A DNA stretch of 64,000 nucleotides from Octopus sinensis (lineage: Eukaryota), in contig NC_043010.1 of assembly GCF_006345805.1 (NCBI RefSeq), positions 62,744,001 to 62,808,000 on the forward strand. The letters are read 5' to 3'. The position numbers and the translations under genes were made by a program. Shown piece after piece: positions 1,060 to 64,000 of the stretch; the first letter of the stretch is position 1, and each line of letters starts with the position of its first letter. Under the pieces are notes generated by a model, which was not told the DNA's origin, made no database searches, and saw nothing but the letters and a program-made list of their open reading frames with translations.

Positions 1060-1476
1060 TATTTCTTTATTTGCCCACAAGGGGCTAAACATAGATGGGA
1101 CAATCAAGGACAGACAAACGGATTAAGTCGCTTACATTGACCCCAGTGCGTAACTGATACTTAATTTATTGACCCTGAAAAGATGAAAACAAAGTCGACC
1201 TCGGCGGAATTTGAACTCAGAACATAACGGCAGACGAAATACCTATTTCTTAACTACCCACAAGGGGCTAAACACAGAGGGGACAAACAAGGACAGACAA
1301 AGGGATTAAGTCTATTATATCGACCCCAGTGTGTAACTGGTACTTAATTTATCGACCCCGAAAGGATGAAAGGCAAAGTCAACCTCGGCGGAATTTGAAC
1401 TCAGAACGTAGCGGCAGAAGAAATACGGCAAAGAATTCCGTCAGGCATGCTAATGTTTCTGCGAGCTCTCTGCCTT
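1060..1476 (-). mobile_element. SINE family A dimer (head-body-tail-body-tail) with 18-bp TSD
   Basis: AAAAAATATATTGTTTCT at 1042-1059 and 1477-1494. Confidence 0.85.
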
Positions 1477-5985: not shown

Positions 5986-6469
5986 ATATGTATATGTCTG
6001 TGTTTATTCCCCCACCACCATCTCTTGACAACCGATGTTGGTGTGTTTATGTCCCCGTAACTTAGCGGTTTGGCAAAACAGACTGATAGAATGAGTACTA
6101 GTCTTACAAAGAACAAGTCCTGGGGTTGATTTGCTCAACTAAAGGTGGTGCTCCAGCATGGCTGCAGTCAAATGACTGAAACAAAAGAATGAAAGAATTA
6201 TTATCATCATCATCATCATCAATAGTAGTAGTAGTAGTATATAATTGCCATTTCATTATCAGAAGTCTCTATGTGGTATTCGACATGCTAGAAATAACAG
6301 TAAAATTTTCATCATCATATTTTATGTAAGGAAAACAGATGTTGGGGTAATGTGGTACCTGCACACAATGGGAAAAAAAAAATTGTGGTGGTCATAACTG
6401 GAATGTGTTTGATCAAGGACGACTTGGGAGTAAACAACAACCATACCACCTTCACCATCCAACCATTAC

Positions 6470-7224
6470 TGAGACACCACCACCACCACCACCACCACTG
6501 CCATCTTCATCACTCATTATCAGTCATCATCATCATCATCATCATCGCCATCATCATTGCTCACATCCTCTTCACCATGACACCCATCCTCCTCATCACC
6601 ATTAACACCACATGACCATCATCACATCCCATCTGTCTGGCTCTCCTTACTCCTCAACACTGTCACTCCCCCCCCCCGACCCTTCCCCACACCAGTGCAT
6701 TACTTCCCACCCACCACCACTACCACCACCCCCCGCCGCCACCAAGTCCCATCCGCCTTTCTCACCTTCCCTTCCCTTACTACCACCACCACCACCATCA
6801 CTGCAGCAGAGCAGCAGGGATGCCACTTTTCCCTTCACCCCCTTCTCCCTCCCACCTACTTCACCAAACAACCAGTCCCCCCCCACCGCCCCCACCACCA
6901 CCACCACCACCATTACATCCATGTCATGCACCCCCTCCTCCCACCCCGTCCCACTCTCCACCACACCTGACCACCACCATCACCACCACTACCACCACCA
7001 AGCCTTATTCTCTCTCTCTTTCCTCTACATGCATCCACCCACCCACCCACCCGCCCCCTCCACACCACACCTGGCCCATTCTACTCAACACCCTCATCCC
7101 CCACCCCCACCCCCCGTGCTGCTTGCTGCTTAGGATCCATCAAACTCCATCCACTTCTGTTTGTTACTGCAGCCTCTCACTTTCACTCCTGCCTCCCACT
7201 ATTTCTGTCATTCCACCACCACCA

Positions 7225-7256
<32 letters not shown>

Positions 7257-7870
7257 ACCATCACCTCCATTATCTCTGCCATTGTTCCCCTCCACCTATT
7301 ATTAATACCATCTCCATGATTACTACTCCTCCCCCTTCATTATCAAATAATACCACCATCAGCCACCAACACCAATGCAACCACCGCCGCCACCACCACC
7401 ATCATCACCACTACTCCCTTGCCAATAAAGGCTGCCACCACCACCACCACCACCACTATGAACATCACTGCCTCCACCACTACCACCACTGTGAACATCA
7501 CTGCCGCCGCCGCCACCACCACCACCATCACCATCATCACCACTACTCCCTTGCCAATAAAGGCCACCACCACCAACATCACTGCCTCCACCACCATCAT
7601 CACCACTACTCTCTTGCCAATAAAGGCCACCACCACCAACATCATTGCCTCCACCACCACCACCATCATCATCACTGCTTCTCTGGCAAGTACAATCACC
7701 ACAAACACCCACCACCCCCACCACCTCACCCCCTCCTTCCTTCCTCATCAAGATCAGCTCCACCACTGGCACCACCACCACCAGAGCAGCCATCATGTCT
7801 CCCCCACCTACCACCACTCCTCCTTGCAGCAGTACCGCCCACCCACCCACCCCCTACTCTACCCATCCCA
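6470..7870. repeat. (CCA/CAT)-rich low-complexity tract with recurring CACTACTCYCTTGCCAATAAAGGC units (7410-7630)
   Basis: Strongly C/A-biased + strand; three near-identical units. Confidence 0.85.
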
Positions 7871-8371
7871 TCTGTCAGCCTCCATGAGATGTAGCCTTTG
7901 TAGCTTTCACTTAACCCCTCTTTGGACACACAGACAGCCGCATGCACACGCACACGTAAACCTACTGGCATATCTATGCTCACACACACACACACACACA
8001 CACATGTGCACGGATGCACACATATCTAAATGTATGCAAGTGTGTGTGTGTGTCTGTAATTATGTGGGTGTATATATGTGTGTACACATGTGTGATTGCA
8101 TTCATCTTTCTGCTGTATACATGTGTGTGTGTGTATACATATATATATATATTCATACATGTAATGTGTTCATGTATGTTTTTGTACTGGTTTGTGTGTA
8201 TGCCTGTGTATGACTAGATGTGTGTATACGTGGCCATAAATTATACACCATATATATATATATACACATACGCATATATGCACGCATACACATATACCCT
8301 TTTGTGATTTAAGAATAATCCACCCTGACTTTGTAATGTCTCCTCATCCATTTATTTGCCCTTGTGGCTTA

Positions 8372-16050: not shown

Positions 16051-17460
16051 AAGTTGGCAGTCTACTCTGAAGTTTCGCCCCTGGCTGTTCACGAACTGGT
16101 GTGTATGTGTTTCTATATACATACATACACGTTTATGTATAAGGAGAGAGCGGAGAGATATATATACAGAACGAAGTGTTTGGAGGAGAGATGAAAAAAA
16201 ATTGCCTGAGTGAAATTAGAAAGAAAGAGAGAGAGAGAGAGAGAGTACGTGGGAGTATGAGGAGAGGTTGAATAGTGGCGGCGGTGGTGGTGGTGGTGAA
16301 GACTGCGGGTGTAATTAGACAGTGGAAGGTGGAGGGGGAAAAAGATGAAGTGGAGTCGGTGGGGGAGGAGGGTGGTAGCGGCGGTGGAGAAGCTTGTAAT
16401 TAGTGGAACGCGGGTGGGAGGAGGGAACGGGAGTGGTGGGAGTAATAATTATTATTAGGACGTAGTAGGGGAGGAGGAGGAGCAGGAGGAGACAGATTTT
16501 AGTCGTTGATGCGGTGGTGGTGGTGTTGGGGAGATGAAAGAGGTGGGAAGGTTGTTGTTCTCTCTGTTAAGATCTTCCTTCCACTTCGTTTAGTTTCCCC
16601 CTCACTCACTGCCAGCAACTGATTCCTCTCTTACCACTACCCTCTTTCTCTGTGAGGTGTTGGTGTATGAATGGTTGAGAGAAGGGGAGGAGGTGTACGT
16701 CTCTGTCTGTCTGGCTAATTGTTTCTCTCTCTCTCTCTCTCTCTTACTCTCCTCTACACACTCTCCCTTGCTGAGGATTCCCTTAGCTTAGTGTATGTGT
16801 GTGTGTATATACGTATATATATATATGTATGCGTGTCCTAGTTTACGTGTGTACGTTGAACACACACTACTGTAATATATGCATATGTTAACGTGTGTAT
16901 GCACAGGCTCTCACTGACACCCTCTCTCTATATCTCTATCTCTTTCACTGTCTCTTTACTTCTCTCTACTTCTATCACTCTCTAATTTTTTTCCTTTCCC
17001 CTCTACTCTCCCCCTCTCTTGTCACTTGTCAATCTTTCTCTTTCTCCTTCACGTTTTCTCTCTCTCTCACTTTCATCTCTTAATCTCTCTCTCTCTCTCT
17101 GTTTTTCTCTGTGTTGACTATGGACATGGCTGTCTGTCTATTGATTTTTCTCCTTACCAAATGGGATGGGGGGGATGTCACAGTACATCACCACCACCAC
17201 TATCATCTCTGCCATTCACACAACACCTCCACCACCGCTTCCCCCTCCACCTCCACCCCCCCATACTTTATTGATTGATCATTGATTGTGAAGCCAGATT
17301 TTTACACTACTCAAACTCACCCCCTCCTCCACCCCCATACCCCCAGCCCTCTCTCTCTCATTATCTCCCATTCTCACTCCTAGATGTTTTTATTTATTTT
17401 ATTTTTTCTTTTTCTTCTCTCTCATGACATAGCTTCACTCCATCTTGCTTGTCATCTCTT

Positions 17461-17820
17461 TCACACACACACACACACACACACTCTACCACCACCATCC
17501 ACCATCTCTTTCACACCACACTCTCTACCATCAAGTCCTCAACCATTACGCTGCACCGCCGCTACCATCACCACCACCACCACCACCAGCTACTGCCATC
17601 ATTATGCTTCATCATTCTTCACACATCCCTGTTCCCCTTCACCATCGCCACCACCACCACCACCACCACAGCTGTCATCACCGTCACCCCCCTCCTTTTC
17701 TTCCACCGCCACCATTGCCAACGCTATTCCATCACAACTCCCCCCACCCTCACCCTCCGCCGCATCAAAAGTCCTTACCCCACCCCAGTCCATTGCCTCC
17801 TGTTGCCATTGATACTACTA

Positions 17821-17851
<31 letters not shown>

Positions 17852-18204
17852 ACCACCACCATCCACCATCTCTTTCACACCACACTCTCTACCATCAAGT
17901 CCTCAACCATTACGCTGCACCGCCGCTACCATCACCACCACCACCACCACCAGCTACTGCCATCATTATGCTTCATCATTCTTCACACATCCCTGTTCCC
18001 CTTCACCATCACCACCACCACCACAGCTGTCATCACCGTCACCCCCCTCCTTTTCTTCCACCGCCACCGCCACCATTGCCAACGCTATTCCATCACAACT
18101 CCCCCCACCCTCACCCTCCGCCGCATCAAAAGTCCTTACCCCACCCCAGTCCATTGCCTCCTGTTGCCATTGATACTACTAACACACACACACACACACA
18201 CACA
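17461..18204. repeat. Tandem duplication, 2 x ~360 bp, bounded by (CA)n
   Basis: The copies differ only in trinucleotide run lengths. Confidence 0.92.
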
Positions 18205-19528
18205 TTCAGCGCTACCTCCATCCACTTCTCTGTTTGTGAAGCTGCCAGCACCCACCCACGAACCACCACCCCTACCCCCGACATCTCCGTTGCCATGGAC
18301 ACCATCAACCCCACACCACCAACCCCCGCCGCTGCCATCATCATACCGTTTGCTTGTTTTATGTTGCCAACCTTCACCGTCTACCATCTCCATCCCCCCC
18401 ACACCACAATCACTATGGCACATCCTGCCAATAGTCACCACCGCTACCATTGCCACCACTACCACCACCACCACCATCATCATATGTTCTGCCAACAACC
18501 ACCTCCATCACCACCACCACCACTACCACCAGTGCCAATAGTCTCCTCCTCTACCATCACCACCACCACCCTACATCCTGCCAATAGCTCAACCCCCACC
18601 CCACCGGCACCACCACCACCACTACCATTCAAACCACATGCCTTGCCAACAGCCATCACCACCACCCTCACCACACACACAGTAGCCACTACTAACTACC
18701 ATTGTTGTCATCACCAATCCTTCATACCATACACCTTGCCAATAGCCTCCACCTCCATCATCCTCTCTCCATCCTTTCCAATAATTTATACCCTGCTGCT
18801 AATAACTACCACCACCACTGACTACCTTCACCACCCAGAGCCCACCACTGCCATTGTCTTCACCACCCTTCTTACCTTGACAATAGCCACCACTGGCACC
18901 AGCATCCATTTACCACACATTCTGCCAACAGCTCCCAGTCTTGAGACCCAAGAATGACCACCACCACAAACAACTATCTCTTTATGTTTGTCACCCAACA
19001 ACCTGCTAGATATAGCAGCCAAATCACATTCTTGCAAAATTCAACAGAAAATAGTCATCTTGGAACAATGTAATAAAAAAAAAAAACCCTATTAAATATA
19101 CTTGACCAAGGGGCTCAAACACATCAAGGGAACATTGTCCAAGGTGATAATTTTCAGTGCCTGGTGGAAGGGTCTTCAAAAAACCGTTCCAAGATTATTT
19201 ATTTATTAATACTTTTAATACAAAAATTCTGAGACTGCCTCCTGTCTCTTTGATACAAACTTCTTGATTCAAAATCAGTGGCCCTCAATCATTTTCCCTC
19301 CCCCCTTCGATTCCTATTTTACTCTTGTGGACCCCTCATGGCCATTTGATATTTAAAAGAATTCTTGTAATTAAATATTATCAGGAAGTGTATATTAAAA
19401 TAATATTAAAATATTATTTTGTCAATTGTAGAATAATAATAATATTTTAACTAACAAAATCTTATATGGACCCCCTAAAGTTCATGTAGACCCCAGCCAT
19501 AAAATTACATTTACTGTTTTAATTTTAA

Positions 19529-24169: not shown

Positions 24170-25044
24170 AATATAATTGTAATATAATTTATTTTTCAGT
24201 TTATTTAATAATATTTTTTCTATTTTTATTTCAGGTTCTCCAGACTGGACTTGAACTCCTGGACATTTGATCAGTTCCACACACACAAACACGTATACAT
24301 ATATGTACAGCAATCTGCTTGTGTACCTGTTGGCCCAGCTGTCTAATTAATTGACTCTTCTTCGTTTCTTTATAACATAAACGAGTAAACTCAACAAGAC
24401 TCAAACAGGGAGCTCTTCACTCATACTCATACTCCACTCATTTCTCATCCATACTCATCTCATGTACATGTTGATAATGGATCCCTGTTTCTCAAAGACA
24501 TGTACTTCCTTGTAAATAACACTGCATGCCTCTCCATTTTGTTTTTAATCAATTTAAATTGCAGAGTTCTCTCCCTTGCCTGTCATGACAAGAACTGTCA
24601 CTAATGCTAATAACTCTTCTTATCATCACAGGTGTAGTTTCAATTGATTAGAAGAGAAAAAAAAATCACTTTTCTGACCCAGAACATTTAAATTAATATG
24701 TTGGCTTCTGCTACTTAACTAACAATGATTTATAGTTGTATGTTGACCTGAGGTCAGTAGAGATCGCTAAAACTGGAGAATCATTGGCCAAACTGACTTA
24801 GATATGGACGTTTCAGACTTTACATAAGAGAAAGAAGAAAGACTGATTTTTTTTTTCAAAAAACCCAAACAAAACCCAACTCTCTCTTTCCCCTTCCTCT
24901 CTCTCTCCCTTACCAAAATACTTGATGTTGTTGTTATTGTTGTGTTTGTGAGGTAAAAAAAGGACCAGGAGACACATATATATATATATTAAGGGTTGGG
25001 TGAAAGGCTGAGGAAGGAAGACACCTTAAGTTTGCAAAACAAAG

Positions 25045-27372
25045 ATGGAGAAGACTTCATCTGATAAATCCGGTAAAAACCTGGTCTCCAACACCAGCGA
25101 GCGGAATCACCCTCATAGCATTTGTTCGGCAAGCAGCAGCAATGGTACCAGCTGTGCGAATAGTCCGAGCCATGTCACAGCCGCCATCAACATGCACTCA
25201 AAGCAGTTCATGCAACATTATCCATGGCAGGCTCAACGCTTCCCTCACGTCCCCGACAAGTCGTGGTGCAGTGAGATATACAGCAACCAGTTTGCTCAGC
25301 GTTGTTACTTACAGTCTCATGGTATTTTCCCAGCGGCTGGCACCGCTGCTGCGGGCAGCTGCTCCGACAAGGCTTTCCACTGCGCCGCCAGCTACATGAA
25401 CCAGTTCACGCAGCGGTGTTTCCTGCAGACGCACGACCGGCTGCAGAACTTTGATAAACAGGCGATAGACGTTAACGACTACATGAAGCACTTGCATGGG
25501 GGTGCATACCAGCCGAAGCATTGCCAGGCTGCTAACAACAATAGCATAGTGAGTAGTGGTTGTAGTGGTGGGGGTAGTTGTAGTGTCGGGGGTGGCGGCA
25601 GCTGTAGCATTGGGGGTGGTGGGGGTGGGGGTGGAGGTAGTTGTGGTGTTGGTAGTGGTAGTAGTAGCTGCAGTGTTAACCTGACCAGTAACAACAGCAG
25701 CTGCGGCAACACCAACCATCGCAATAGCATATCCACCACCAGCAACAACAACAACAACAACAACAACACTAACAGCAACAATAACAATAACAACAACAAC
25801 AATAACAACACCAGCAATAACAGCAACACGTCTGTTTATCCTAAGCAAGTAGCACAGGTGCAGCACGCTGTGAAGACCCAGCCCCCCTCTTCGCCAAACA
25901 CAAAGGTGCCCCTTCAGCAGCCCCACCACATGCTCCTTCTGCAGCCCCCTCCACCCATCGAGAAGCCCTTCCACTGTGACCTTTGTCCAAAGCAGTTTGC
26001 ACGTAGGAATACTTTGCAGATGCACAAACGCATTCACACAGGTGAGAAGCTGTTCCACTGCAGCTACTGCGACAAGCGATTCGTGCACCGAGATAAACTT
26101 CAGATACATGAGCGGACTCACACGGGGGAGAAACCGTTTCACTGCACTTACTGCACGAAACAGTTTTCTCGTAAGGACAAATTAAAGATTCACGAGTGCT
26201 CTCACACGGGATTAAAACCTTATCACTGCAGCTACTGCGACAAACGGTTTGTCCAAAGAGAAAAACTAAAGATCCACACGAGAATCCATACGGGGGAACG
26301 TCCGTATTCGTGTGACATTTGTTTCAAGCAATTTGCGCGCGGTGATAAGCTTCAAATTCATCGTAGAACTCACACAGGAGAGAAACCATTCCACTGTGAA
26401 TACTGTCCGAAGAACTTTGTCCAGCGTGATAACCTGGTTATACACAGACGGACCCATACTGGGGAGAAACCATTCTCTTGCGAAGTATGTTCCAAGCGAT
26501 TTGCTCGCGGTGATAAGTTGCAAATCCATCGCAGAACACATACGGGTGAGAAACCGTTCCATTGTGAATACTGTCCGAAGACTTTTGCTCAAAGAGATAA
26601 TTTAGTCATACATAGACGTACCCATACGGGGGAGAAGCCCTTCTCCTGTGAATTCTGTCCCAAGCAGTTCTCTCGGAGCGACAAGCTCCAGTTGCATCGT
26701 AGGACCCACACGGGGGAGAAATTGTTCCATTGTAAGTATTGTTCAAAGCAGTTTGTCCAAAGGGACAAACTTCAGATCCATGAACGAACTCACACGGGCG
26801 AGAAGCCGTTCCACTGTGAGATTTGTTCAAAGAAGTTTGCTCGTAAAGACAGGCTGCAGATCCACAAGAAGACGCACACGGGTGAAAAGCCGTTCCACTG
26901 CGACCTTTGCCCGAAGCAGTTTGCGCAGCGAGACAACCTGAAGATTCACCGGAGGATTCACACGGGCGAGAAGCCGTTCCACTGCGAAATCTGTTCGCGG
27001 CAGTTTGCCAGGAAGGACAAACTGCAGATCCACCGGAAGACTCACATGATCGAGAAGGTTGCGTTCAACTGCGACATATGCCACAAACAGTTCGAATCGA
27101 AGGAGATGCTGATGAGTCACCAGCAATTAAACCATGCTCCGCCACCGCCTCCGCCGCCGCCACCACCACCTCCGCCGCCCCTCACCAATAACGACACCTC
27201 ACATTTATGCTGCCAGGTTTGCAACCGGGAATTTGCAACTGTCGAGAAGTTACAAAATCACGAAAAGACACATAAACCAGTGAGGAATAATTTCCTGAAA
27301 CCCACATCGTGTAAGAATATCAAGGAATACACCCCAATGAGTACATTGCTGTGGCAATCTATCTACCCTTAA
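25045..27372 (+). CDS. C2H2 zinc-finger protein, 775 aa, 15 fingers (13 in a TGEKP-linked tandem array), single coding exon
   Basis: Uninterrupted ATG-to-TAA ORF. It has 15 C-x2-C...H-x3/4-H motifs with TGEKP-type linkers, an N-terminal Gly/Ser and poly-Asn tract, and a poly-Pro tract before the last finger. Confidence 0.95.
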
Positions 27373-37813: not shown

Positions 37814-38983
37814 TTATTTCGTCTGATAAAGCTGTGCTGCCGCTGGGGCAGAGACGGTGACGGCTCCTTGGTACATTTGAATGGTAGGGAAGATCTGCGT
37901 GGTCGCCGGCGATATCTGTATCGTGCTCGGAAAGATATGTGTGACAGGATTCATCTGGGTGTAGAGCGGGTAGACCTGGGTGCCGGCCGGGTAGGAGGCG
38001 GCTTGAGTGCTCGCTACCACGTTCGAGTTGAGGTGGTGACTAACGTTCACCCCTGAGTGCTGTGGTTGGCTCGAGATGTCGACAACCGAGGCACTTGCTT
38101 GTTGGCTAGCAACCACTGCATGCTGTGATGTATTGACACTGACAGCACAACTGGTATTCACCCCAGAGCTGTTAGCGGCAACGGTAGTGGGGCTAGTCTG
38201 TTTATCTTTGTTAGGTTTATTATTGGTATTTGAAGAACTACTACTACTACTACTACTGCTACTACTATTACTACTACTACTACCACCACCACCACCACCA
38301 CCAGTACTACTGCTGTTGATGTTACTGCTGCTGATTGGTGTTGGGGAGGCTTCTGTTGTGATTGATGTTGTTGTTGCCAGGGTAACATTATTACTTCCGT
38401 TGTTGTTGTTGTTGTTGTTGTTGCTGTTGTTGCGTAGCGGCACGCAGCTTATTTTGATGCCGTTCTTGTTCGGCCGATTGTGTTTGACGAGGTGGTCTTT
38501 CCGGGAGAAGGCGAACCCGCAGATCTGGCACCGGAACGGCCGCTCGCCCGTGTGGATCCTCTGGTGCACCTTCAGGTACGACCGGTGCACGAACGTCTTG
38601 CGGCAGATCTCGCAGCTGAACCGCTTCTCCAGCTGATGCGTGCCTCGGTGCCGTGCCAGGTGGTCGCTGCGATAGAAAGCGCAGCCGCAGATCTGACACT
38701 TGAAAGGGCGCTCACCGGTGTGGATCCGCTTGTGGAGCTTCAAGTGGTCCCTTCGCGACAGACACTTGCCGCAGATGTCGCACTTGTACTGCTTGTCGGA
38801 CGTCGCACCCCCCGGTGCCACCGACAGCGCCATGTTACCGTCCCCTGCTAAATTAGCCGCAGCCAGCACGACAGCTTGTTGATTACTGCTGCTGCTGTTG
38901 TGAAGAGTGTGACCATGGTGATGGTTGTGGTGATGGTGATTGTGGTGATGGTGGCCAATATGATTGCAACTGTTTCCCTCCAT
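37814..38983 (-). CDS. C2H2 zinc-finger protein, ~389 aa, 4 fingers, with poly-His, poly-Asn, poly-Gly/Ser tracts
   Basis: Fingers CDIC..H..H, CQIC, CEIC and CQIC (the last lacks the second His), with TGERP linkers. The track ORF starts at TTG 39022 inside a pyrimidine tract/AG acceptor (ttgtctttcctgtatgcgttag). The first ATG (MEGNSC) is at 38983. Confidence 0.92.
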
Positions 38984-40329
38984 CTCAACTCCTGATCTAT
39001 CTAACGCATACAGGAAAGACAACAGATGTAGTTGAGTCTAACGGCTGCACACAGCCATGTCAAGGTGTAATTCAAGAACAGACCCAGTTGTAATTAGTTA
39101 ACGATTCTTGGGAAACGACATCTTGTAAACATGGATGATGTCTTTTTTTACTTTAGTTTTGTCTTTAAACAACGAAGAACAAGAAAATGGTAGACAATAA
39201 TAAGACAATTTCCAATTCCTCTTCCCTTGTTGTTCGGATTTTAACATCCGAAATCCAACTCAAGAATTTTCACTGAACCAAGATATTTATAGATTATCTT
39301 AGGAAATGGCAGTTCAATGTCGGATTAAATTCTTGGAAAGTTATTTGCTTTTAATTACTGTTGTCCGTATGTTGTTGATCACCAGTATCAATAATGATGA
39401 TGATGTTAATGATAATCTGATAATTTAGTGATCTGTGATTAATGATTGAAGAATCGGGGTTTCTTAATCACTGTGGAGCATCTATAAATCGTCACGTGCC
39501 TCGGCGACACCAGAACACTCGTGGAATAAAAGTTGAACCACTTCAGACAATTCTGAATTCTTCAAGTATTGGAAAAAAATCAGTCAGTACAGTATCACCA
39601 TTCACAATATATATACATGTGTGTGTGTGTAGATTCAAGGGCAATACCTATGATAATCAAGTGAGTTGGACAAACCTGTATCTGATGGCACTATGTGAGA
39701 ATTCTTGGGGTCACAGAGTGAGACTGTCTTTCATGTAAAAATGTATGTATAGATGTGTATATATATGTCTGCATATAACATCTATAATTGTCTATATATA
39801 TATAGACACACAACACAATATGTCCTATAAATCAATATGTATATATGTATGTATAAAGATGTATGTGTCAGGAAGCAGGTGTAGATTCACAGTTTCTCTT
39901 CCTGAAGGGTCTCAACTAATCTGTAAGGAGGCTTTCCAACAGAAAAATCCTGAGGGAGGAAAAAAAAAACTCCTTTTCTCTCAAAGGGTAAAATGTAGGA
40001 TGTATATGTATATATATATATATACACATATAAAAACACCTTAATCCAAAGAGTCTATGCAGGGTGTATATGCGAATACAAAAATCTGTTTGGTTGTGAA
40101 GGAGCTCGGTGAAGTTTAAATATAAGTTTAGCTGTTTTCAATCTGAAATAGAAGAAAAGATGTTTGTAAAATCAAAATAAAGGAAAATAATTTTTTTTTA
40201 ATGTGGTTAACAAACACATCATCATCATCTAACATCTGCTCTCCATGCTGGCATGGGTTAGAGAATTTGACCAAAACTGTTGAGCTGGAGGGTCATACCA
40301 TGTTCCAGTCTGATTTGGTATGGTTTCTA

Positions 40330-50744: not shown

Positions 50745-52305
50745 TAGACTTAGACTTAGACTTAGATATGTTTCGACCAGAGATTGGTCCAGGCCATGTC
50801 TAACTTAATAGCACCACCTGATAGGATTATTCGAATCCTGTTTAAGTCAAGTTTTGTTCAAGTAGTGAGTTCTTGTTGGGTGAGTTGTATCCAATTATGG
50901 GTGGCTTATCTGGTATTCTTTGAAGGAATCTATCCAGACTCTGTTTGAAGTTGATGGGATCCTTTTCCTCTTTGATCTCCCTCGGGACAATGTTAAATAG
51001 GGCAGGGCCTGTCGAGGAAAAGAAATTATGTTGCAGTGTACGTGTATGTTGTGATCTTGAATTTGGCAGGGGACGTATAGCCCGTGGTCCAAGTCTTGGA
51101 TGAACCTTGAAGCTAATGTTTAGGTCGTTTGGGCAAAGTTGGCGGTATATTTTCCACATCGTACAAATGATGTACCGCTCACGGCGACGCTGGAGGGAGT
51201 AAAATTTCAAGGCTTTGAGGCGATCCCAATAATCGAGAGCAGCCATGCCTTCAATTTGTTTAGTGAGAGCCCTCTGGGGTGACTCAATTCTGGAGATGTT
51301 TTGTCTTGTGTGAGGAGACCACAGTGGGCAGCAGTATTCAAGGTGTGGCCGTACAAAGGAGGAAAAAAGTGGTATGATGACACCTTGTTCTCTGGACTGG
51401 AAAGTTCTTAAGATCCAGGAACTCATCCTACGAGCTATATCGACCTTCTTATTGATGTGTGCACTCCAACTGAGATCGTCATCAACAATTACACCCAGGT
51501 CTCTGATATTGTTAGAGGCTGTGAGCGTTTCCCCTGAAGGAAGAGAGTATGGTTGTTTTAGTGAGGAATTTCTTCCAAAATGCATCAGCTCAAATTTTCC
51601 CTCATTCAGTTGCATTTTGTTTCTGTCTGCCCATTGACTCACAGCATATAGATCAGACTGGAGTTGAGTTCGGTCTGCTTCTTCATTGACGATTTGCTGG
51701 AGCTTAGTGTCATCAGCGAATATTTTCACTTTGCAGTGATGTACGACACTGGAAAGGTCGTTTACGTAAATTATGAAGAGTAGCGGATCCAAAACAGATC
51801 CCCGGGGAACACCGCTGGTGACTTTTGCTGGGTTTGAGTGGACTCCATCAACTACAACATGTTGTGTTCTATTCGCCAGGAAATACTGAATCCAGCGTAG
51901 AACTTTTCCACGGATTCCAACATTTGCCAATTTTGAGAGTAGGATGTTATGGTCTACCCTGTCGAACGCTTTACTGAAGTCAAGATATATGACGTCAGAG
52001 TTCGAACCTGTTCCCAAGGCTTTGAGTACATCTTCAATGTGGTGTAAGAGCTGTGTTAGACAGTCCCTGCCACAGCGAAAGCCATGCTGATTTGCATTTA
52101 GGAGTTTGTGGGTCTCCAGGAAGTCAGCTATCCTTGATCTTAACACTCTTTCAAACACTTTAATGATGTGGGAGGTGAGTGAGATTGGGCGATAGTTGAC
52201 TGCGAGGGATCTGTTTCCCTGTTTGAAAACCGGGATGACCGACTGAGATAGAAACTGTTTCGGTATATAACCTGCGTCTAACGAGTTTCTCCAGAGGTTG
52301 GTCAT
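50745..52305 (-). mobile_element. 5'-truncated CR1/L2-group LINE with open reverse-transcriptase ORF (50842-52305), 3'UTR stem-loop and (TCTAAG)n tail
   Basis: RT motifs NYRPISLTS, NQHGFR, YLDFSKAFDRVDH, SGVPRGSVL, FADDTKL, RPHLEYCCPLWSP, RRRERY. No endonuclease domain. AGGATT-cgaat-AATCCT hairpin after the stop; + strand (TAGACT)3 at 50745-50766. Confidence 0.93.
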
Positions 52306-52353
52306 ATATAATATATGTATCTATCTATCTATCTATATATATATATATATAAA

Positions 52354-55854: not shown

Positions 55855-56270
55855 TATTTCTGTATTGCCCACAAAGGGCTAAACATAGAGGGGACAAACA
55901 AGGACAGACAAAGGGATTAAGTCAATTACATCGACCCCAGTGCGTAAATGGTACTTAATTTATCGACCCTGAAAGGATGAAAGGCAAAGTCAACCTCAGC
56001 GGAATTTGAACTCAGAACGTAACAGTAGACGCATTACCTATTTCGTTACTACCCACAAGGGGCTGAACACAGAGAGGACAAACAAGGACAGGCAAACAGA
56101 TTAAGTCAATTATATCGACCCCAGTGCGTAACTGGTACCTATTTAATTGACCCTGAAAGGATGAAAGGCTAAGTCGACCTCGGCGGAATTTGAACTCAGA
56201 ACGTAACGGCAGACGAAATACAGCTACGCATTTCGCCCTGCGTGCTAACGATTCTGCCAGCTCGCCACCT
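55855..56270 (-). mobile_element. SINE family A dimer
   Basis: Two bodies, one head; junction ..cattacctatttc at ~56031-56044. Confidence 0.8.
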
Positions 56271-61584: not shown

Positions 61585-62808
61585 TTACATCAATGATTGG
61601 ATGTTATTGTCAGATGATCCTTGATTGTCACCTTTTCTCTGACCAACTGTGTAGGAGGGAATGGTCAAGGTACTGGGGCAGCCATTCCATGTCCACGAAG
61701 ACGCCGGCGAAGTGTTCCGTTTCCAGTCGTAGTGAGCTTGCGAGGGCATCTGCTGCTGCTGCTGTTGTTGTTGATGTTGTTGTTGTGGAGGCTGTTGGTG
61801 TGCAGCTGTTGCTATAGAAACCGTGGTGTTTGTAGACCTCTGGGGCTGTGAGATACTTTTCTGATGGGAACAGAGGGACGATGCAAGGTTGTCGAGGTTC
61901 AGGGTTGAGAGAACCGGCTGTTTTAGAAGGGTTGTCGTCTTGGATGTGGAAGAGGCTGATGTTGGTTGGTGAGGAGACGAAGACACTGATGCAACTTGAT
62001 AAGAATGATGCTGTGCTGAGCTGACACCTGTAGTATTCATTAAAACAGGTGTGTTCAGACCACTAATTGGAATCGTTTTACATAGTTCGTCAGCAGAAAC
62101 CGGGGTCAAATGGCGTGAAATGTCATGTCTGTCTCCATGCAGAAATTCCTTCTTTAAAAGATTGCCACACTTTGCATTCGAGAGTACCGAAGTCATATTG
62201 GTTTTGTCGTGAGGGTGAATAGTCTGAGAGCAACTGTAATGGTTGGTATGAGTACGTTCGTGCTTGTTTAGGTGGTCTTTCCGAGAGAAAGCTTTCGTAC
62301 AAATCTGACAACAAAACGGCTTCTCCCCAGAATGGGTTCGTTGATGGATTTTCAATTTGTCATTTCGAGAAAAAGCTTTTGGGCAAATATGGCAGACAAA
62401 TGGTTTTTCTCCTGAGTGAGTTCTGGCATGGTTTTTTAGCTTGTCTTTACGAGCAAAAGCCATCGGGCAGATATCACATGCAAATGGGCGTTCCCCTGTG
62501 TGGGTCCGTTCGTGGATCTTTAGCTTGTCCCTTTCTGGGAACGCTTTACAGCAGAAGACACAGATGAAATGCTTCCCTAGTTCGGGAGCCAATTCGTGTT
62601 TCTTCAGATATGCACGGAGGGTGAACCGCTTACGGCAGACATTGCATTTGTAGGGTTTCTTGTCGATGTACGACTGCCGGTAGCTGACATAGGTGTACGG
62701 ATTGGACAAGGGCGGTGTTGATGGGCTTGGGGTCGTGAACGGACCGAAGCCGTAGGAGTGATTGTTTCCAACAACGGGTGAGAATTGAACCTCTTGGTTT
62801 GCGTACAT
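61585..62808 (-). CDS. C2H2 zinc-finger protein, 407 aa, 5 fingers, C-terminal Ser/Thr- and poly-Gln-rich region
   Basis: ATG-to-stop ORF. Fingers CNVC (second His missing), CVFC, CDIC, CHIC and CQIC, with TGERP/SGEKP linkers. Confidence 0.93.
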   Translation of the reverse strand: MYANQEVQFSPVVGNNHSYGFGPFTTPSPSTPPLSNPYTYVSYRQSYIDKKPYKCNVCRKRFTLRAYLKKHELAPELGKHFICVFCCKAFPERDKLKIHERTHTGERPFACDICPMAFARKDKLKNHARTHSGEKPFVCHICPKAFSRNDKLKIHQRTHSGEKPFCCQICTKAFSRKDHLNKHERTHTNHYSCSQTIHPHDKTNMTSVLSNAKCGNLLKKEFLHGDRHDISRHLTPVSADELCKTIPISGLNTPVLMNTTGVSSAQHHSYQVASVSSSPHQPTSASSTSKTTTLLKQPVLSTLNLDNLASSLCSHQKSISQPQRSTNTTVSIATAAHQQPPQQQHQQQQQQQQMPSQAHYDWKRNTSPASSWTWNGCPSTLTIPSYTVGQRKGDNQGSSDNNIQSLM

Positions 62809-64000
62809 GCTGATTGTTCTATTTAGGAGTCTGAGGCGTAATTGCTATGAAAGTATGCTGATGACGATCTTGATGATGATATTGATAACACTGATGAAGA
62901 TGATGATATGACGATGACTAGCAGTTTGGTGAGGGACTTACATATAAACTTACCAAAATGTAACGTAATTAACTAGATAATTAACTAGACATCTTAACAT
63001 ACATAGAGTAACTATATTTCATCAACAACTACATGTGACTGTATATGGTTATAATATATATATATAATCGTATATAGTTATATAATTACTACACTATGAC
63101 TGAAAATAGAGGAGCACTAGACTAGAAACATCCACAGTTTCAGTTTAATCACAGCCTAGACAGACCTTATAACTGTCTATGGTCTACGGAGAAGGAACTA
63201 TGTATAAACTATACCAGTTATATACTGGGGTGACAGACACGAATGACAGTTATTCAAGTAGACTGGAGCAGTTTACTTTTATGAAGACCAACTCTTGAAC
63301 GATTTTGTGTTTGAGGTTTAATTAGGGGCTGATCAACTGCAGTCAGCCCAAACTTAAACACAGAGAAAGGGCACTGACTACGGACCATGGTGAGGGAAGG
63401 GGTCAACTAAAAGGTGGGTAAGCGGTAGGGTTAATGCAGTATTAAAAGATATGGAGATTAGTCCATTTAGGGAACACACAAAATAGGGGTTCCACAGAGT
63501 AACTAACCCCTAAACTATCCCTTACATGTACAATCATCTTTATGCCCTTAACAAAAGTCTGTAAGGAATCACTTGACTTGCAAAAAGTAACAGCCAGCTA
63601 TCCCTCAAACCACAGCCTACTGTCTTAAACAAGGAAAGGAAGCATTAAAAAATATGGTCCTAGATATCCCCTAAAAAGACAGGATGGTCATGGCTGGAGC
63701 ACCTTTGATCATGGGTCTGCTTGTTAGACAACAACTCTTAACAAAACAGAGTGATGATACAGGAGAGAAGGAGTGATCAAATTCTATGAAAGGGGTCAGT
63801 TTTATTTTGGAATGGCAAAAAGTGTAATATTGTGAAATAGCAGGGGTTAATTTTTTTCCTCCTTTATTAAAGCATGTTAGTTATAGACCCTTGTCAAACG
63901 TCCCCCACTAAAATGGTAGCGTATATATTCTTATATTTCTGTATATAGTTCACAGATGAGATCCAGATATTTCTGTACAAAACATGAAATCATGGTATAT

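What the first reader, a model, noticed from the sequence alone, without database searches (positions are those of the whole stretch)
25960..27130. Strictly alternating two-finger recognition code predicts a hexamer-periodic target
Seen: helix -1 residues of fingers 1-13 are R,H,R,Q,R,Q,R,Q,R,Q,R,Q,R. Position 2 is almost always D, position 3 is K/R in most R-fingers (T in finger 1) and N/K in the Q-fingers, and position 6 is mostly I. Fingers 5-6 and 7-8 are near-identical in protein but heavily diverged at synonymous sites, indicating an old 168-bp duplication under purifying selection. Known code: R-1/D2/K3 reads NGG; Q-1/N3 reads NAA; Q-1/K3 reads NGA; D2 favours G/T at the next base. Inference: a ~35-bp site like (KGG KRA)n, e.g. 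TGGTGA/TGGTAA repeats. That would make this a microsatellite-reading factor rather than a conventional TF.
Basis: partly seen in the sequence, partly recalled or inferred. Interest (0 to 1): 0.7.

Follow-up and report, generated by a model that had tools for sequence, protein, structure and literature searches.

The report
Octopus zinc-finger gene with alternating fingers
An intact octopus gene encodes a 13-finger DNA-binding protein whose fingers strictly alternate between two types; a small, old gene family shares and conserves this pattern, which suggests but does not prove that the protein reads DNA with a six-base rhythm.

Summary
Window 25045-27372 (+) is one intact 775-codon ORF. It has 13 canonical TGEKP-linked C2H2 fingers whose helix -1 residues are R,H,R,Q,R,Q,R,Q,R,Q,R,Q,R, with D at +2, K/N/R at +3 and I at +6. 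Fingers 5-6 and 7-8 are an old 168-bp duplication: 49/56 aa identical, synonymous sites saturated.

The genome is an octopod (2.7 Gb, 30 large contigs). The gene belongs to a subfamily of at least 8 genes in a ZNF cluster on contig C14 (61.0-63.7 Mb). All members share the R-H-R-Q-R-Q-R... pattern, two Cys-less relic fingers at the N-terminus and a near-invariant C-terminal tail. Between these old paralogs the base-contacting residues are more conserved than the rest of the finger. The sister gene keeps all 11 helices identical in three octopod species. The alternation is therefore inherited from two-finger-unit duplication and kept by purifying selection.

The predicted target (NGG-NRA)n follows published finger modules. 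(TGGTGA)n is a common dispersed microsatellite in this genome. However, there is no binding evidence, the gene-specific site order is not enriched, and purely canonical linkers argue against all 13 fingers reading 39 bp. "Microsatellite reader" remains a reasonable, untested hypothesis. It is a new member of the known cephalopod C2H2 expansion.

The parts
25045..27372 (+). Complete single-ORF coding sequence (775 codons plus stop) of the poly-C2H2 zinc-finger protein
   Evidence: Open frame. The start 'M-E-K' aligns with the M-[ED]-K starts of the paralogs. Pfam zf-C2H2 and zf-H2C2_2.
25261..25332 (+). Relic finger 1 ([24 protein letters not shown]): finger-like helix, second Cys replaced by Tyr
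   Evidence: Read from the translation. The same motif (Y.NQF.Q..YLQ.HG) is present in all subfamily members and in Argonauta P0042.
25372..25449 (+). Relic finger 2 ([26 protein letters not shown]), not zinc-competent
   Evidence: Paralog L012 has FHPDVYGKQFAQNCYVQSHERMHNIEKP at the same place.
25534..25827 (+). Low-complexity linker (poly-Gly/Ser/Cys, then poly-Asn); its composition differs in every paralog
   Evidence: polyQ in L013 and L016, polyA in L014, polyP/S in L015.
25969..27060 (+). Array of 13 canonical C2H2 fingers (84 nt each) with -1 = R,H,R,Q,R,Q,R,Q,R,Q,R,Q,R. Linkers: TGEKP x8, TGEKL x2, TGLKP, TGERP.
26305..26640 (+). Fingers 5-8: two copies of a two-finger unit (RGDKLQI + QRDNLVI). 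This is the old 168-bp duplication. It is an insert relative to the 9-finger core of paralogs L012, L013 and L015. The unit occurs once in sister gene L006 (f6-f7).
27064..27135 (+). Finger 14, atypical (CX2CX12HX4H; helix SKEMLMS), joined by a non-canonical linker MIEKVA
27139..27180 (+). Poly-proline spacer (14 P)
27205..27273 (+). Finger 15, isolated (helix TVEKLQN)
   Evidence: Conserved as TMEEMQN in L012 and L014.
27286..27354 (+). Conserved C-terminal tail [23 protein letters not shown], a candidate effector or cofactor motif
   Evidence: 22/22 aa identical to L012, L014 and L015 while synonymous sites are saturated. A tail-based search finds 11 hits, all on C14 between 61.0 and 63.7 Mb. 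No Pfam family.

Best explanation
This is an intact, selectively maintained gene for a sequence-specific double-stranded-DNA-binding protein of the Krueppel-type poly-C2H2 class. It is one of about 8-11 members of an old subfamily inside the octopod C2H2-ZNF cluster on contig C14. The array was built by duplicating two-finger (168-bp) units, so two finger classes alternate. The R-type has helix R-x-D-K-L-Q-I and is preceded by A/S. The Q-type has helix Q-R-D-[K/N]-L-x-I and is preceded by V/A. Purifying selection has since held the base-contacting residues nearly constant across paralogs. By the canonical recognition code, an R-type finger should read NGG and a Q-type finger NGA or NAA. Any run of neighbouring fingers should therefore prefer a G/A-rich strand with 6-bp periodicity, (NGG NRA)n. 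The most likely mode is binding by subsets of about 4-6 adjacent fingers, which can engage in several equivalent registers on periodic DNA, rather than all 13 fingers at once. The conserved C-terminal tail, and perhaps the Cys-less relic fingers, would recruit partners. What is shown: gene integrity, finger classes, origin by duplication, and conservation. What is inferred: DNA binding, the triplet assignments, the periodic site and the effector role of the tail.
For: The ORF is intact and Pfam finds C2H2 domains. The closest solved structures are DNA-bound poly-ZF arrays: ZFP568, Aart, CTCF and PRDM9. The alternation is non-random (p about 6e-4) and unusually long compared with 138 other arrays. 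The subfamily shares the pattern: WIN RHRQRQRQRQRQR, L012/L013/L015 RHRQRQRQR, L014 RHRQRHRERQRQR, L016 RHRQRQR, L006 RHRRQRQRQRR. Fingers correspond by position: WIN F1-4 and F9-13 match f1-9 of L012, L013 and L015, and F5-8 match L006 f6-7 duplicated. The paralogs are old (pS 0.86-0.96), yet contact residues are 31-33/36 identical with pN 0.045-0.079, against 0.12-0.16 for non-helix positions. The sister gene L006 has dN/dS 0.029 against another octopod, and its 11 helices are identical in G000, P0047 and Argonauta. R-type and Q-type fingers also differ at framework positions. Code support: R-1 to G, N3 to A and Y3 to A (PMC3668361); RSDKLVR = GGG and QSSNLVR = GAA (PMC5260015). Y3 to A makes the paralogs' QRCYLKI finger equivalent to WIN F12 QRDNLKI. 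Matching periodic DNA exists: (TGGTGA)5 at 1809 or more positions, and a 9.3-kb (CATCAC)n array.
Against: There are no binding data of any kind. The PWM I used is hand-set. K at +3 in a Q-type finger and I at +6 have no verified rule. Natural long arrays usually use only part of their fingers, and their motifs often deviate from the simple code. The genome counts do not show enrichment of the gene-specific site. My controls were not independent, because the reversed pattern is a rotation of, or overlaps, the same repeat class. No orthologue of this gene itself was found to test conservation directly.
Confidence: 0.5

Rival explanations
1. The protein is a dedicated microsatellite reader that lays most of its 13 fingers along about 35 bp of (TGGTGA)n/(TGGTAA)n-type repeats, and it acts on simple repeats rather than at unique regulatory sites.
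For: The array uses only two finger 'letters' and has the longest alternating run seen. (TGGTGA)n is dispersed over all large contigs and is about 7 times more frequent than (AGTGGT)n. A 9.3-kb (CATCAC)n(CAT)n array lies at C1:209.37 Mb. Paralogs differ mainly in the number of R/Q units, as expected for readers of repeats of different lengths. There is natural precedent in Zscan4 on (CA)n (PMC7083622). There is engineered precedent in GGAA- and CAG-repeat arrays (PMC9374162; PMC5013590).
Against: All 12 linkers are canonical, whereas engineered long arrays needed extended spacers after every second finger. This gene's own order mixes NAA and NGA triplets and fingers 1-2 are different, so a pure microsatellite is not its best predicted site. 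(TGGTAA)n is rare and the exact mixed order is not enriched. The best match in the window reaches only 28 of 52.9 bits.
Confidence: 0.2
2. The alternation is only a historical by-product of two-finger-unit duplication. The protein binds an ordinary short, non-periodic motif with a few fingers (for example the distinctive F1-F4), while the remaining fingers serve affinity, spacing, or protein or RNA contacts.
For: Unit duplication is common and ongoing in this genome. L011 has a Q/E alternation with 99-100% nt identity between fingers i and i+2. L018 and L008 also alternate. F1-F3 (RRNTLQx, HRDKLQI, RKDKLKI) are the most invariant part of every paralog. It is general knowledge that many long ZNFs use a core of 3-6 fingers.
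Against: Contact residues of the repeated fingers are conserved at saturated synonymous divergence, and more so than framework positions. This would not be expected for fingers that do not read bases. Non-DNA roles would not obviously require R/Q at -1 with D at +2.
Confidence: 0.25
3. It is a KZFP-like transposon-targeting repressor evolving in an arms race with octopus repeats.
For: The gene lies in a large tandem ZNF cluster in a repeat-rich genome. Predicted octopus ZNF motifs as a class match TE consensus sequences (PMC10547256). An RT fragment lies 24 kb away.
Against: There is no KRAB or other known repressor domain. The specificity residues are conserved rather than diversified among old paralogs and across species for the sister gene. 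This is the opposite of an arms-race signature.
Confidence: 0.05

Closest known systems
Cephalopod/octopus C2H2 zinc-finger gene expansions (Albertin et al. 2015, from memory; Holzinger et al. 2025, PMC12513265)
   Same: A poly-C2H2 protein encoded in one ORF, lying in a tandem cluster of related genes on one chromosome of an octopod genome. It has no known effector domain. Binding sites are unknown for the whole class.
   Different: This subfamily is small (about 8-11 genes) and old (saturated dS). Its specificity residues are conserved and it keeps a strict two-class finger alternation. The published work describes counts, trees and expression, not finger codes.
KRAB-ZFPs / FiNZ-type TE-targeting poly-ZNFs (PMC10547256)
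   Same: Long TGEKP-linked arrays, clustered genes, and growth by tandem duplication of fingers and genes.
   Different: No KRAB, SCAN or FiNZ domain. Contact residues are under purifying rather than diversifying selection.
Natural simple-repeat-binding zinc-finger proteins: Zscan4 on (CA)n (PMC7083622). From memory only: CLAMP and GAGA factor on GA repeats, ZBTB48/TZAP on TTAGGG, ZNF24 on TCAT repeats.
   Same: If the prediction holds, the target is a short tandem repeat read by C2H2 fingers.
   Different: Those proteins use 1-6 fingers and carry SCAN or BTB domains. None is known to have a 13-finger array with a two-finger periodic code. Binding is not demonstrated here.
Engineered repeat-reading arrays (ZF11xHunt for CAG repeats, PMC5013590; GGAA-repeat arrays, PMC9374162)
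   Same: The same design logic: a small set of finger helices repeated periodically to track a periodic DNA sequence.
   Different: The engineered arrays needed longer linkers after every two fingers. This natural array has only canonical 5-residue linkers.
Xfin, mkr and other early 'finger-pair' ZNFs (from memory, not checked here)
   Same: Alternate fingers are more alike than neighbours, which reflects duplication of two-finger units.
   Different: As far as I recall, no strict two-letter code at the base-contact positions was reported for them.

Membership tests
Krueppel-type C2H2 poly-zinc-finger proteins | Tandem CX2-4CX12HX3-5H units with conserved F and L core residues | tested here: met
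   13 canonical and 2 atypical units. F at position 10 and L at +4 are invariant. Pfam PF00096 scores 192.9 bits and PF13465 scores 300.4 bits, both far above their cut-offs.
Krueppel-type C2H2 poly-zinc-finger proteins | Conserved TGEKP-type inter-finger linkers (the hallmark of DNA-binding arrays) | tested here: met
   All 12 of 12 junctions have 5 residues: TGEKP x8, TGEKL x2, TGLKP, TGERP (sequences).
Krueppel-type C2H2 poly-zinc-finger proteins | Sequence-specific DNA binding | not testable with these tools
   Only inferred, from similarity to DNA-bound arrays (ZFP568, Aart, CTCF) and from the recognition code.
Octopod/cephalopod C2H2 expansion | Membership of a tandem cluster of paralogous ZNF genes in a cephalopod genome | tested here: met
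   Dozens of related ORFs lie on C14 between 60.9 and 63.7 Mb and on C27, C28 and C30. The subfamily tail is found only on C14 between 61.0 and 63.7 Mb. The best named relatives are from Argonauta and Octopus.
Octopod/cephalopod C2H2 expansion | Lineage restriction (no orthologue outside cephalopods or octopods) | tested here: inconclusive
   No relative above 57% identity appears in 5.8 billion or 1.84 billion protein libraries. However, records of the window's own and near species are withheld, and long arrays dominate the rankings.
KRAB-ZFP-like TE repressors | N-terminal KRAB (or analogous repressor) domain | tested here: not met
   No PF01352 or other effector family in the Pfam scan.
KRAB-ZFP-like TE repressors | Diversifying evolution of contact residues -1, 2, 3 and 6 between paralogs | tested here: not met
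   Contact residues are 31-33/36 identical, with pN 0.045-0.079, below the non-helix pN of 0.12-0.16, at saturated pS.
Simple-repeat / microsatellite-binding ZNFs | Demonstrated preferential binding to a tandem repeat | not testable with these tools
   Only code-based prediction, plus the presence of (TGGTGA)n in the genome.
Simple-repeat / microsatellite-binding ZNFs | Predicted site matches an abundant genomic repeat better than controls do | tested here: inconclusive
   (TGGTGA)5 gives 1809 hits against 257 for (AGTGGT)5. But the gene-specific order gives 1141 against 1030, (TGGTAA)4 gives only about 70-100 hits, and the controls are not independent.

The most novel reading that the evidence does not exclude
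An old octopod ZNF subfamily is a set of 'repeat rulers'. The proteins have a selectively frozen two-letter finger code that reads (NGG NRA)n hexanucleotide repeats such as (TGGTGA)n. The paralogs differ chiefly in the number of two-finger modules (3 to 5 or more) and in a few +3 residues. This would let them discriminate repeat length and variant, and would give dispersed microsatellites a regulatory role in the cephalopod genome.
Probability: 0.15. Interest if true: 0.65.

Novelty: new member of a known kind. Interest (0 to 1): 0.35.

Why it matters
The targets of the roughly 1,400-1,800 cephalopod C2H2 ZNFs are essentially unknown, and this is explicitly stated as an open question (PMC12513265). 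This subfamily is an unusually tractable entry point. Its code is simple, conserved and gives a concrete, falsifiable prediction: 6-bp periodic NGG-NRA sites, with (TGGTGA)n as the most frequent genomic match found here. Its paralogs form a natural series of module numbers. It also shows that part of the octopus expansion evolves under purifying selection on specificity residues, unlike the KZFP arms-race model. If the prediction fails, the gene is simply one more clustered ZNF.

Tried and rejected
(1) Orthologue hunting found nothing closer than 56-57% identity.
- The finger-region search and the all-against-all representative search are dominated by long unrelated arrays. The best identity in both is Argonauta P0042.
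- P0042 proved to be the orthologue of the neighbouring gene L006, not of this gene.
- Searches with the N-terminal region and the C-terminal region gave no significant hits.
- The exact-protein look-up found nothing. Records of the own and near species are withheld.

(2) The control is invalid. The reversed TGGTAA repeat is a rotation of the same repeat. The reversed IUPAC patterns overlap the same repeat class. I therefore draw no enrichment conclusions from them. Only one search has an independent same-composition control.

(3) A hand-set PWM scan of the window picks only TGG-rich low-complexity tracts (6.4-7.9 kb and 17.2-18.5 kb on the minus strand; poly-His coding at 38.9 kb), at no more than 28 of 52.9 bits. 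There is no convincing site near the gene.

(4) A telomere-repeat target was considered. TTAGGG = GGG-TTA needs T at the middle of the Q-triplet, which N3 and K3 are not expected to favour. Variant TGAGGG/TAAGGG arrays do match (C25) but are rare. I did not pursue this.

(5) Pseudogene or artefact is rejected: the ORF is intact and dN is far below dS.

(6) The PDB search gives only generic poly-ZF relatives.

Full report
**What is there**

The window is G000:C14:62744001-62808000 of a 2.72-Gb genome with 30 large contigs. The only named relatives of its proteins come from Argonauta hians and Octopus vulgaris, so the organism is an octopod. Records of the same or very near species are withheld from the protein tools.

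Window 25030-27372 (+) is a single open frame. Its Met at 25045 aligns with the M-[ED]-K start of all paralogs, giving a 775-aa protein. Pfam sees only C2H2 families.

A regex parse gives 13 canonical fingers, each exactly 84 nt, from 25969 to 27060. Their linkers are TGEKP x8, TGEKL x2, TGLKP and TGERP. After them come an atypical finger (27064-27135), a poly-Pro spacer, an isolated finger (27205-27273) and a C-terminal tail.

**Checking the observation**

- Position -1 is R,H,R,Q,R,Q,R,Q,R,Q,R,Q,R.
- Position +2 is D in 11 of 13 fingers.
- Position +3 is K or R in the R-fingers (T in F1) and K or N in the Q-fingers.
- Position +6 is I in 11 of 13 fingers.

Fingers 5-6 and 7-8 share 49/56 residues but only 132/168 nucleotides. 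Synonymous sites are saturated (pS 0.78) and pN is 0.068. TRF reports the 168-bp period independently.

Given the composition, an alternating run of 11 occurs in about 6 of 10,000 permutations. In 138 other arrays of at least 8 fingers, taken from the 120 best database hits, the longest such run has a median of 3 and a maximum of 7. Two of those runs of 7 belong to orthologues of this gene's sister gene.

**Where the pattern comes from**

Searching the genome with the best-matching named protein (Argonauta P0042) shows that its true orthologue is not this gene. It is a paralog 88 kb away (L006, 85% identity over the full length).

Fetching the related ORFs on C14 revealed a subfamily whose members share four features:
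- Two Cys-less relic fingers at the N-terminus.
- A low-complexity linker with a different composition in each gene.
- An array that always begins RRNTLQx / HRDKLQI / RKDKLKI / Q-type and then alternates R and Q.
- A C-terminal tail, [23 protein letters not shown].

The -1 strings are:
- This gene: RHRQRQRQRQRQR.
- L012, L013, L015: RHRQRQRQR.
- L014: RHRQRHRERQRQR.
- L016: RHRQRQR.
- L021: RHRLRQR.
- L006 and its Argonauta and Logan orthologues: RHRRQRQRQRR.

A search with the tail finds 11 places, all on C14 between 61.0 and 63.7 Mb.

By position, this gene's F1-4 and F9-13 correspond to f1-9 of L012, L013 and L015. Its F5-8 are two copies of the RGDKLQ[IV] + Q[RK]DNLVI unit, which is present once in L006. 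A tree of seven matched fingers plus the tail places this gene as sister to the L012-L015 group, apart from the L006/Argonauta pair.

Two-finger-unit duplication is common and still active in this genome. L011 on C27 alternates Q and E with 99-100% nucleotide identity between fingers i and i+2. Duplication therefore explains the origin of the alternation.

**Why the pattern is more than history**

The paralogs are old: pS is 0.86-0.96 over nine matched fingers. Yet the four base-contacting positions are 31-33/36 identical, with pN 0.045-0.079. The non-helix positions, which include the invariant Cys, His, Phe and Leu, have pN 0.12-0.16.

The two finger classes also differ at framework positions.

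The sister gene has dN/dS 0.029 against another octopod at dS 0.51. All 11 of its helices are identical in three octopod species.

The tail is 22/22 identical among four paralogs at saturated synonymous divergence.

This is the opposite of the diversifying pattern of KRAB-ZFPs. It argues that the two-letter code is functional.

**The target inference**

- Arg at -1 pairs with G and Asn at +3 pairs with A (PMC3668361).
- The module RSDKLVR is used for GGG and QSSNLVR for GAA (PMC5260015).
- Tyr at +3 prefers A. This makes the paralogs' QRCYLKI finger equivalent to this gene's QRDNLKI.

Reading F13 to F1, the predicted site is NGG NAA NGG NGA NGG NAA NGG NAA NGG NGA NGG NG(R) NTG. Asp at +2 weakly favours G or T at each N. 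Ile at +6 has no rule that I could verify.

The genome does contain matching periodic DNA:
- The exact pattern (NGGNRA)5 is dominated by (TGGTGA)n.
- (TGGTGA)5 with at most 1 mismatch occurs at 1809 or more positions on all large contigs, against 257 for the same-composition (AGTGGT)5.
- A 9.3-kb (CATCAC)n(CAT)n array lies at C1:209.37 Mb.

Several results weaken the specific prediction:
- (TGGTAA)n is rare.
- The gene-specific mixed order is not enriched (1141 against 1030).
- The best match in the window reaches 28 of 52.9 bits, in TGG-rich low-complexity tracts.
- The controls are not independent of the query pattern.
- Engineered long arrays aimed at repeats required extended linkers after every second finger (PMC5013590). 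This protein has only canonical linkers, so contiguous reading of 35-39 bp is doubtful.

**Conclusion on mechanism**

The best-supported reading is a DNA-binding protein whose neighbouring fingers prefer a 6-bp periodic NGG-NRA strand and engage it in subsets and in multiple registers (confidence about 0.5).

Its main rival is that only a few fingers read an ordinary motif (about 0.25). A KZFP-like arms-race role is unlikely (about 0.05).

**Comparison with what is known, and novelty**

The gene is a member of the known cephalopod C2H2 expansion (PMC12513265), whose binding sites are an acknowledged open question. It has no KRAB, SCAN or BTB domain.

Natural repeat-binding ZNFs such as Zscan4 on (CA)n (PMC7083622) and engineered repeat-reading arrays (PMC9374162, PMC5013590) work in the proposed way. 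However, this gene cannot be filed with them without binding data.

Novelty is therefore 'new member of a known kind'. It comes with a testable hypothesis and two side findings: the conserved C-terminal tail and the Cys-less relic fingers.

Noticed in passing
window 27286-27354; also L012, L014, L015, L016, L013, L006, L021: The C-terminal tail [23 protein letters not shown] is 22/22 aa identical in four paralogs although synonymous sites are saturated. A related ending (..EFPxMSxYLW) closes more distant octopus ZNFs (P0004, P0008, L022, L023). It has no Pfam family. It is a candidate effector or cofactor motif of octopus ZNFs.
   Followed up: partly
window 25261-25332 and 25372-25449: There are two finger-like segments that have lost their zinc-binding cysteines ('relic fingers'). 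They are conserved in all subfamily members and in Argonauta. The related ZNF45-like family (P0004, P0073, L022) carries long N-terminal series of such Y-S-K-x-F-x-Q-R relics.
   Followed up: partly
L011 (G000:C27:20793363-20797277): A 17-finger ORF with Q/E alternation at -1, in which fingers i and i+2 are 99-100% identical in nucleotides. This is a very recent amplification of a 168-bp two-finger unit, or an assembly collapse or expansion.
   Followed up: partly
L024 (G000:C1:209366500-209376400): A 9.3-kb satellite-like array with the 27-bp consensus CATCACCATCACCATCACCATCATCAT. On the other strand this reads (TGGTGA)3(TGA)3.
   Followed up: partly
G000:C25:27147519-27149242 and 28873921-28873952; G000:C15:42305404-42306252: On C25 there are telomere-variant arrays mixing TTAGGG, TGAGGG and TAAGGG. 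On C15 there is a 63-bp-period minisatellite. Both match the predicted NGG-NRA order at 2 mismatches.
   Followed up: no
window 37814-39037 (-) and 61585-62844 (-): Two further small C2H2 ORFs, of 4 and 5 fingers. Their helices include RRDHLKL, RSDHLAR and RKDHLVK in the first, and ERDKLKI, RKDKLKN and RNDKLKI in the second. Both have long poly-N/S/Q tracts. The first has a poly-His tract whose antisense strand reads TGGTGA-like repeats.
   Followed up: partly
window 50842-52320 (-): A 492-aa open frame with a reverse-transcriptase domain (RVT_1, E = 1e-29). It is probably a LINE fragment.
   Followed up: partly
window 6400-7900 and 17230-18960: Strongly C-rich (plus strand) low-complexity tracts (GC skew down to -0.59) made of CCA/CAC/CAT-type repeats. 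They include a 364-bp unit present twice (17462-18204) and a 63-bp repeat (7382-7689).
   Followed up: no
window 1074-1426 and 55868-56215: The same ~183-bp element (CCCACAAGGGGCTAAACACAGAGGGGACAAACAAGG...) occurs as a tandem pair at both places. It is probably an octopus SINE-like repeat.
   Followed up: no
window 25534-25827 and the homologous position in paralogs: The linker between the relic fingers and the array is a different homopolymer-rich tract in each paralog: N/G here, Q in L013 and L016, A in L014, P/S in L015. This part turns over rapidly while the fingers stay frozen.
   Followed up: no
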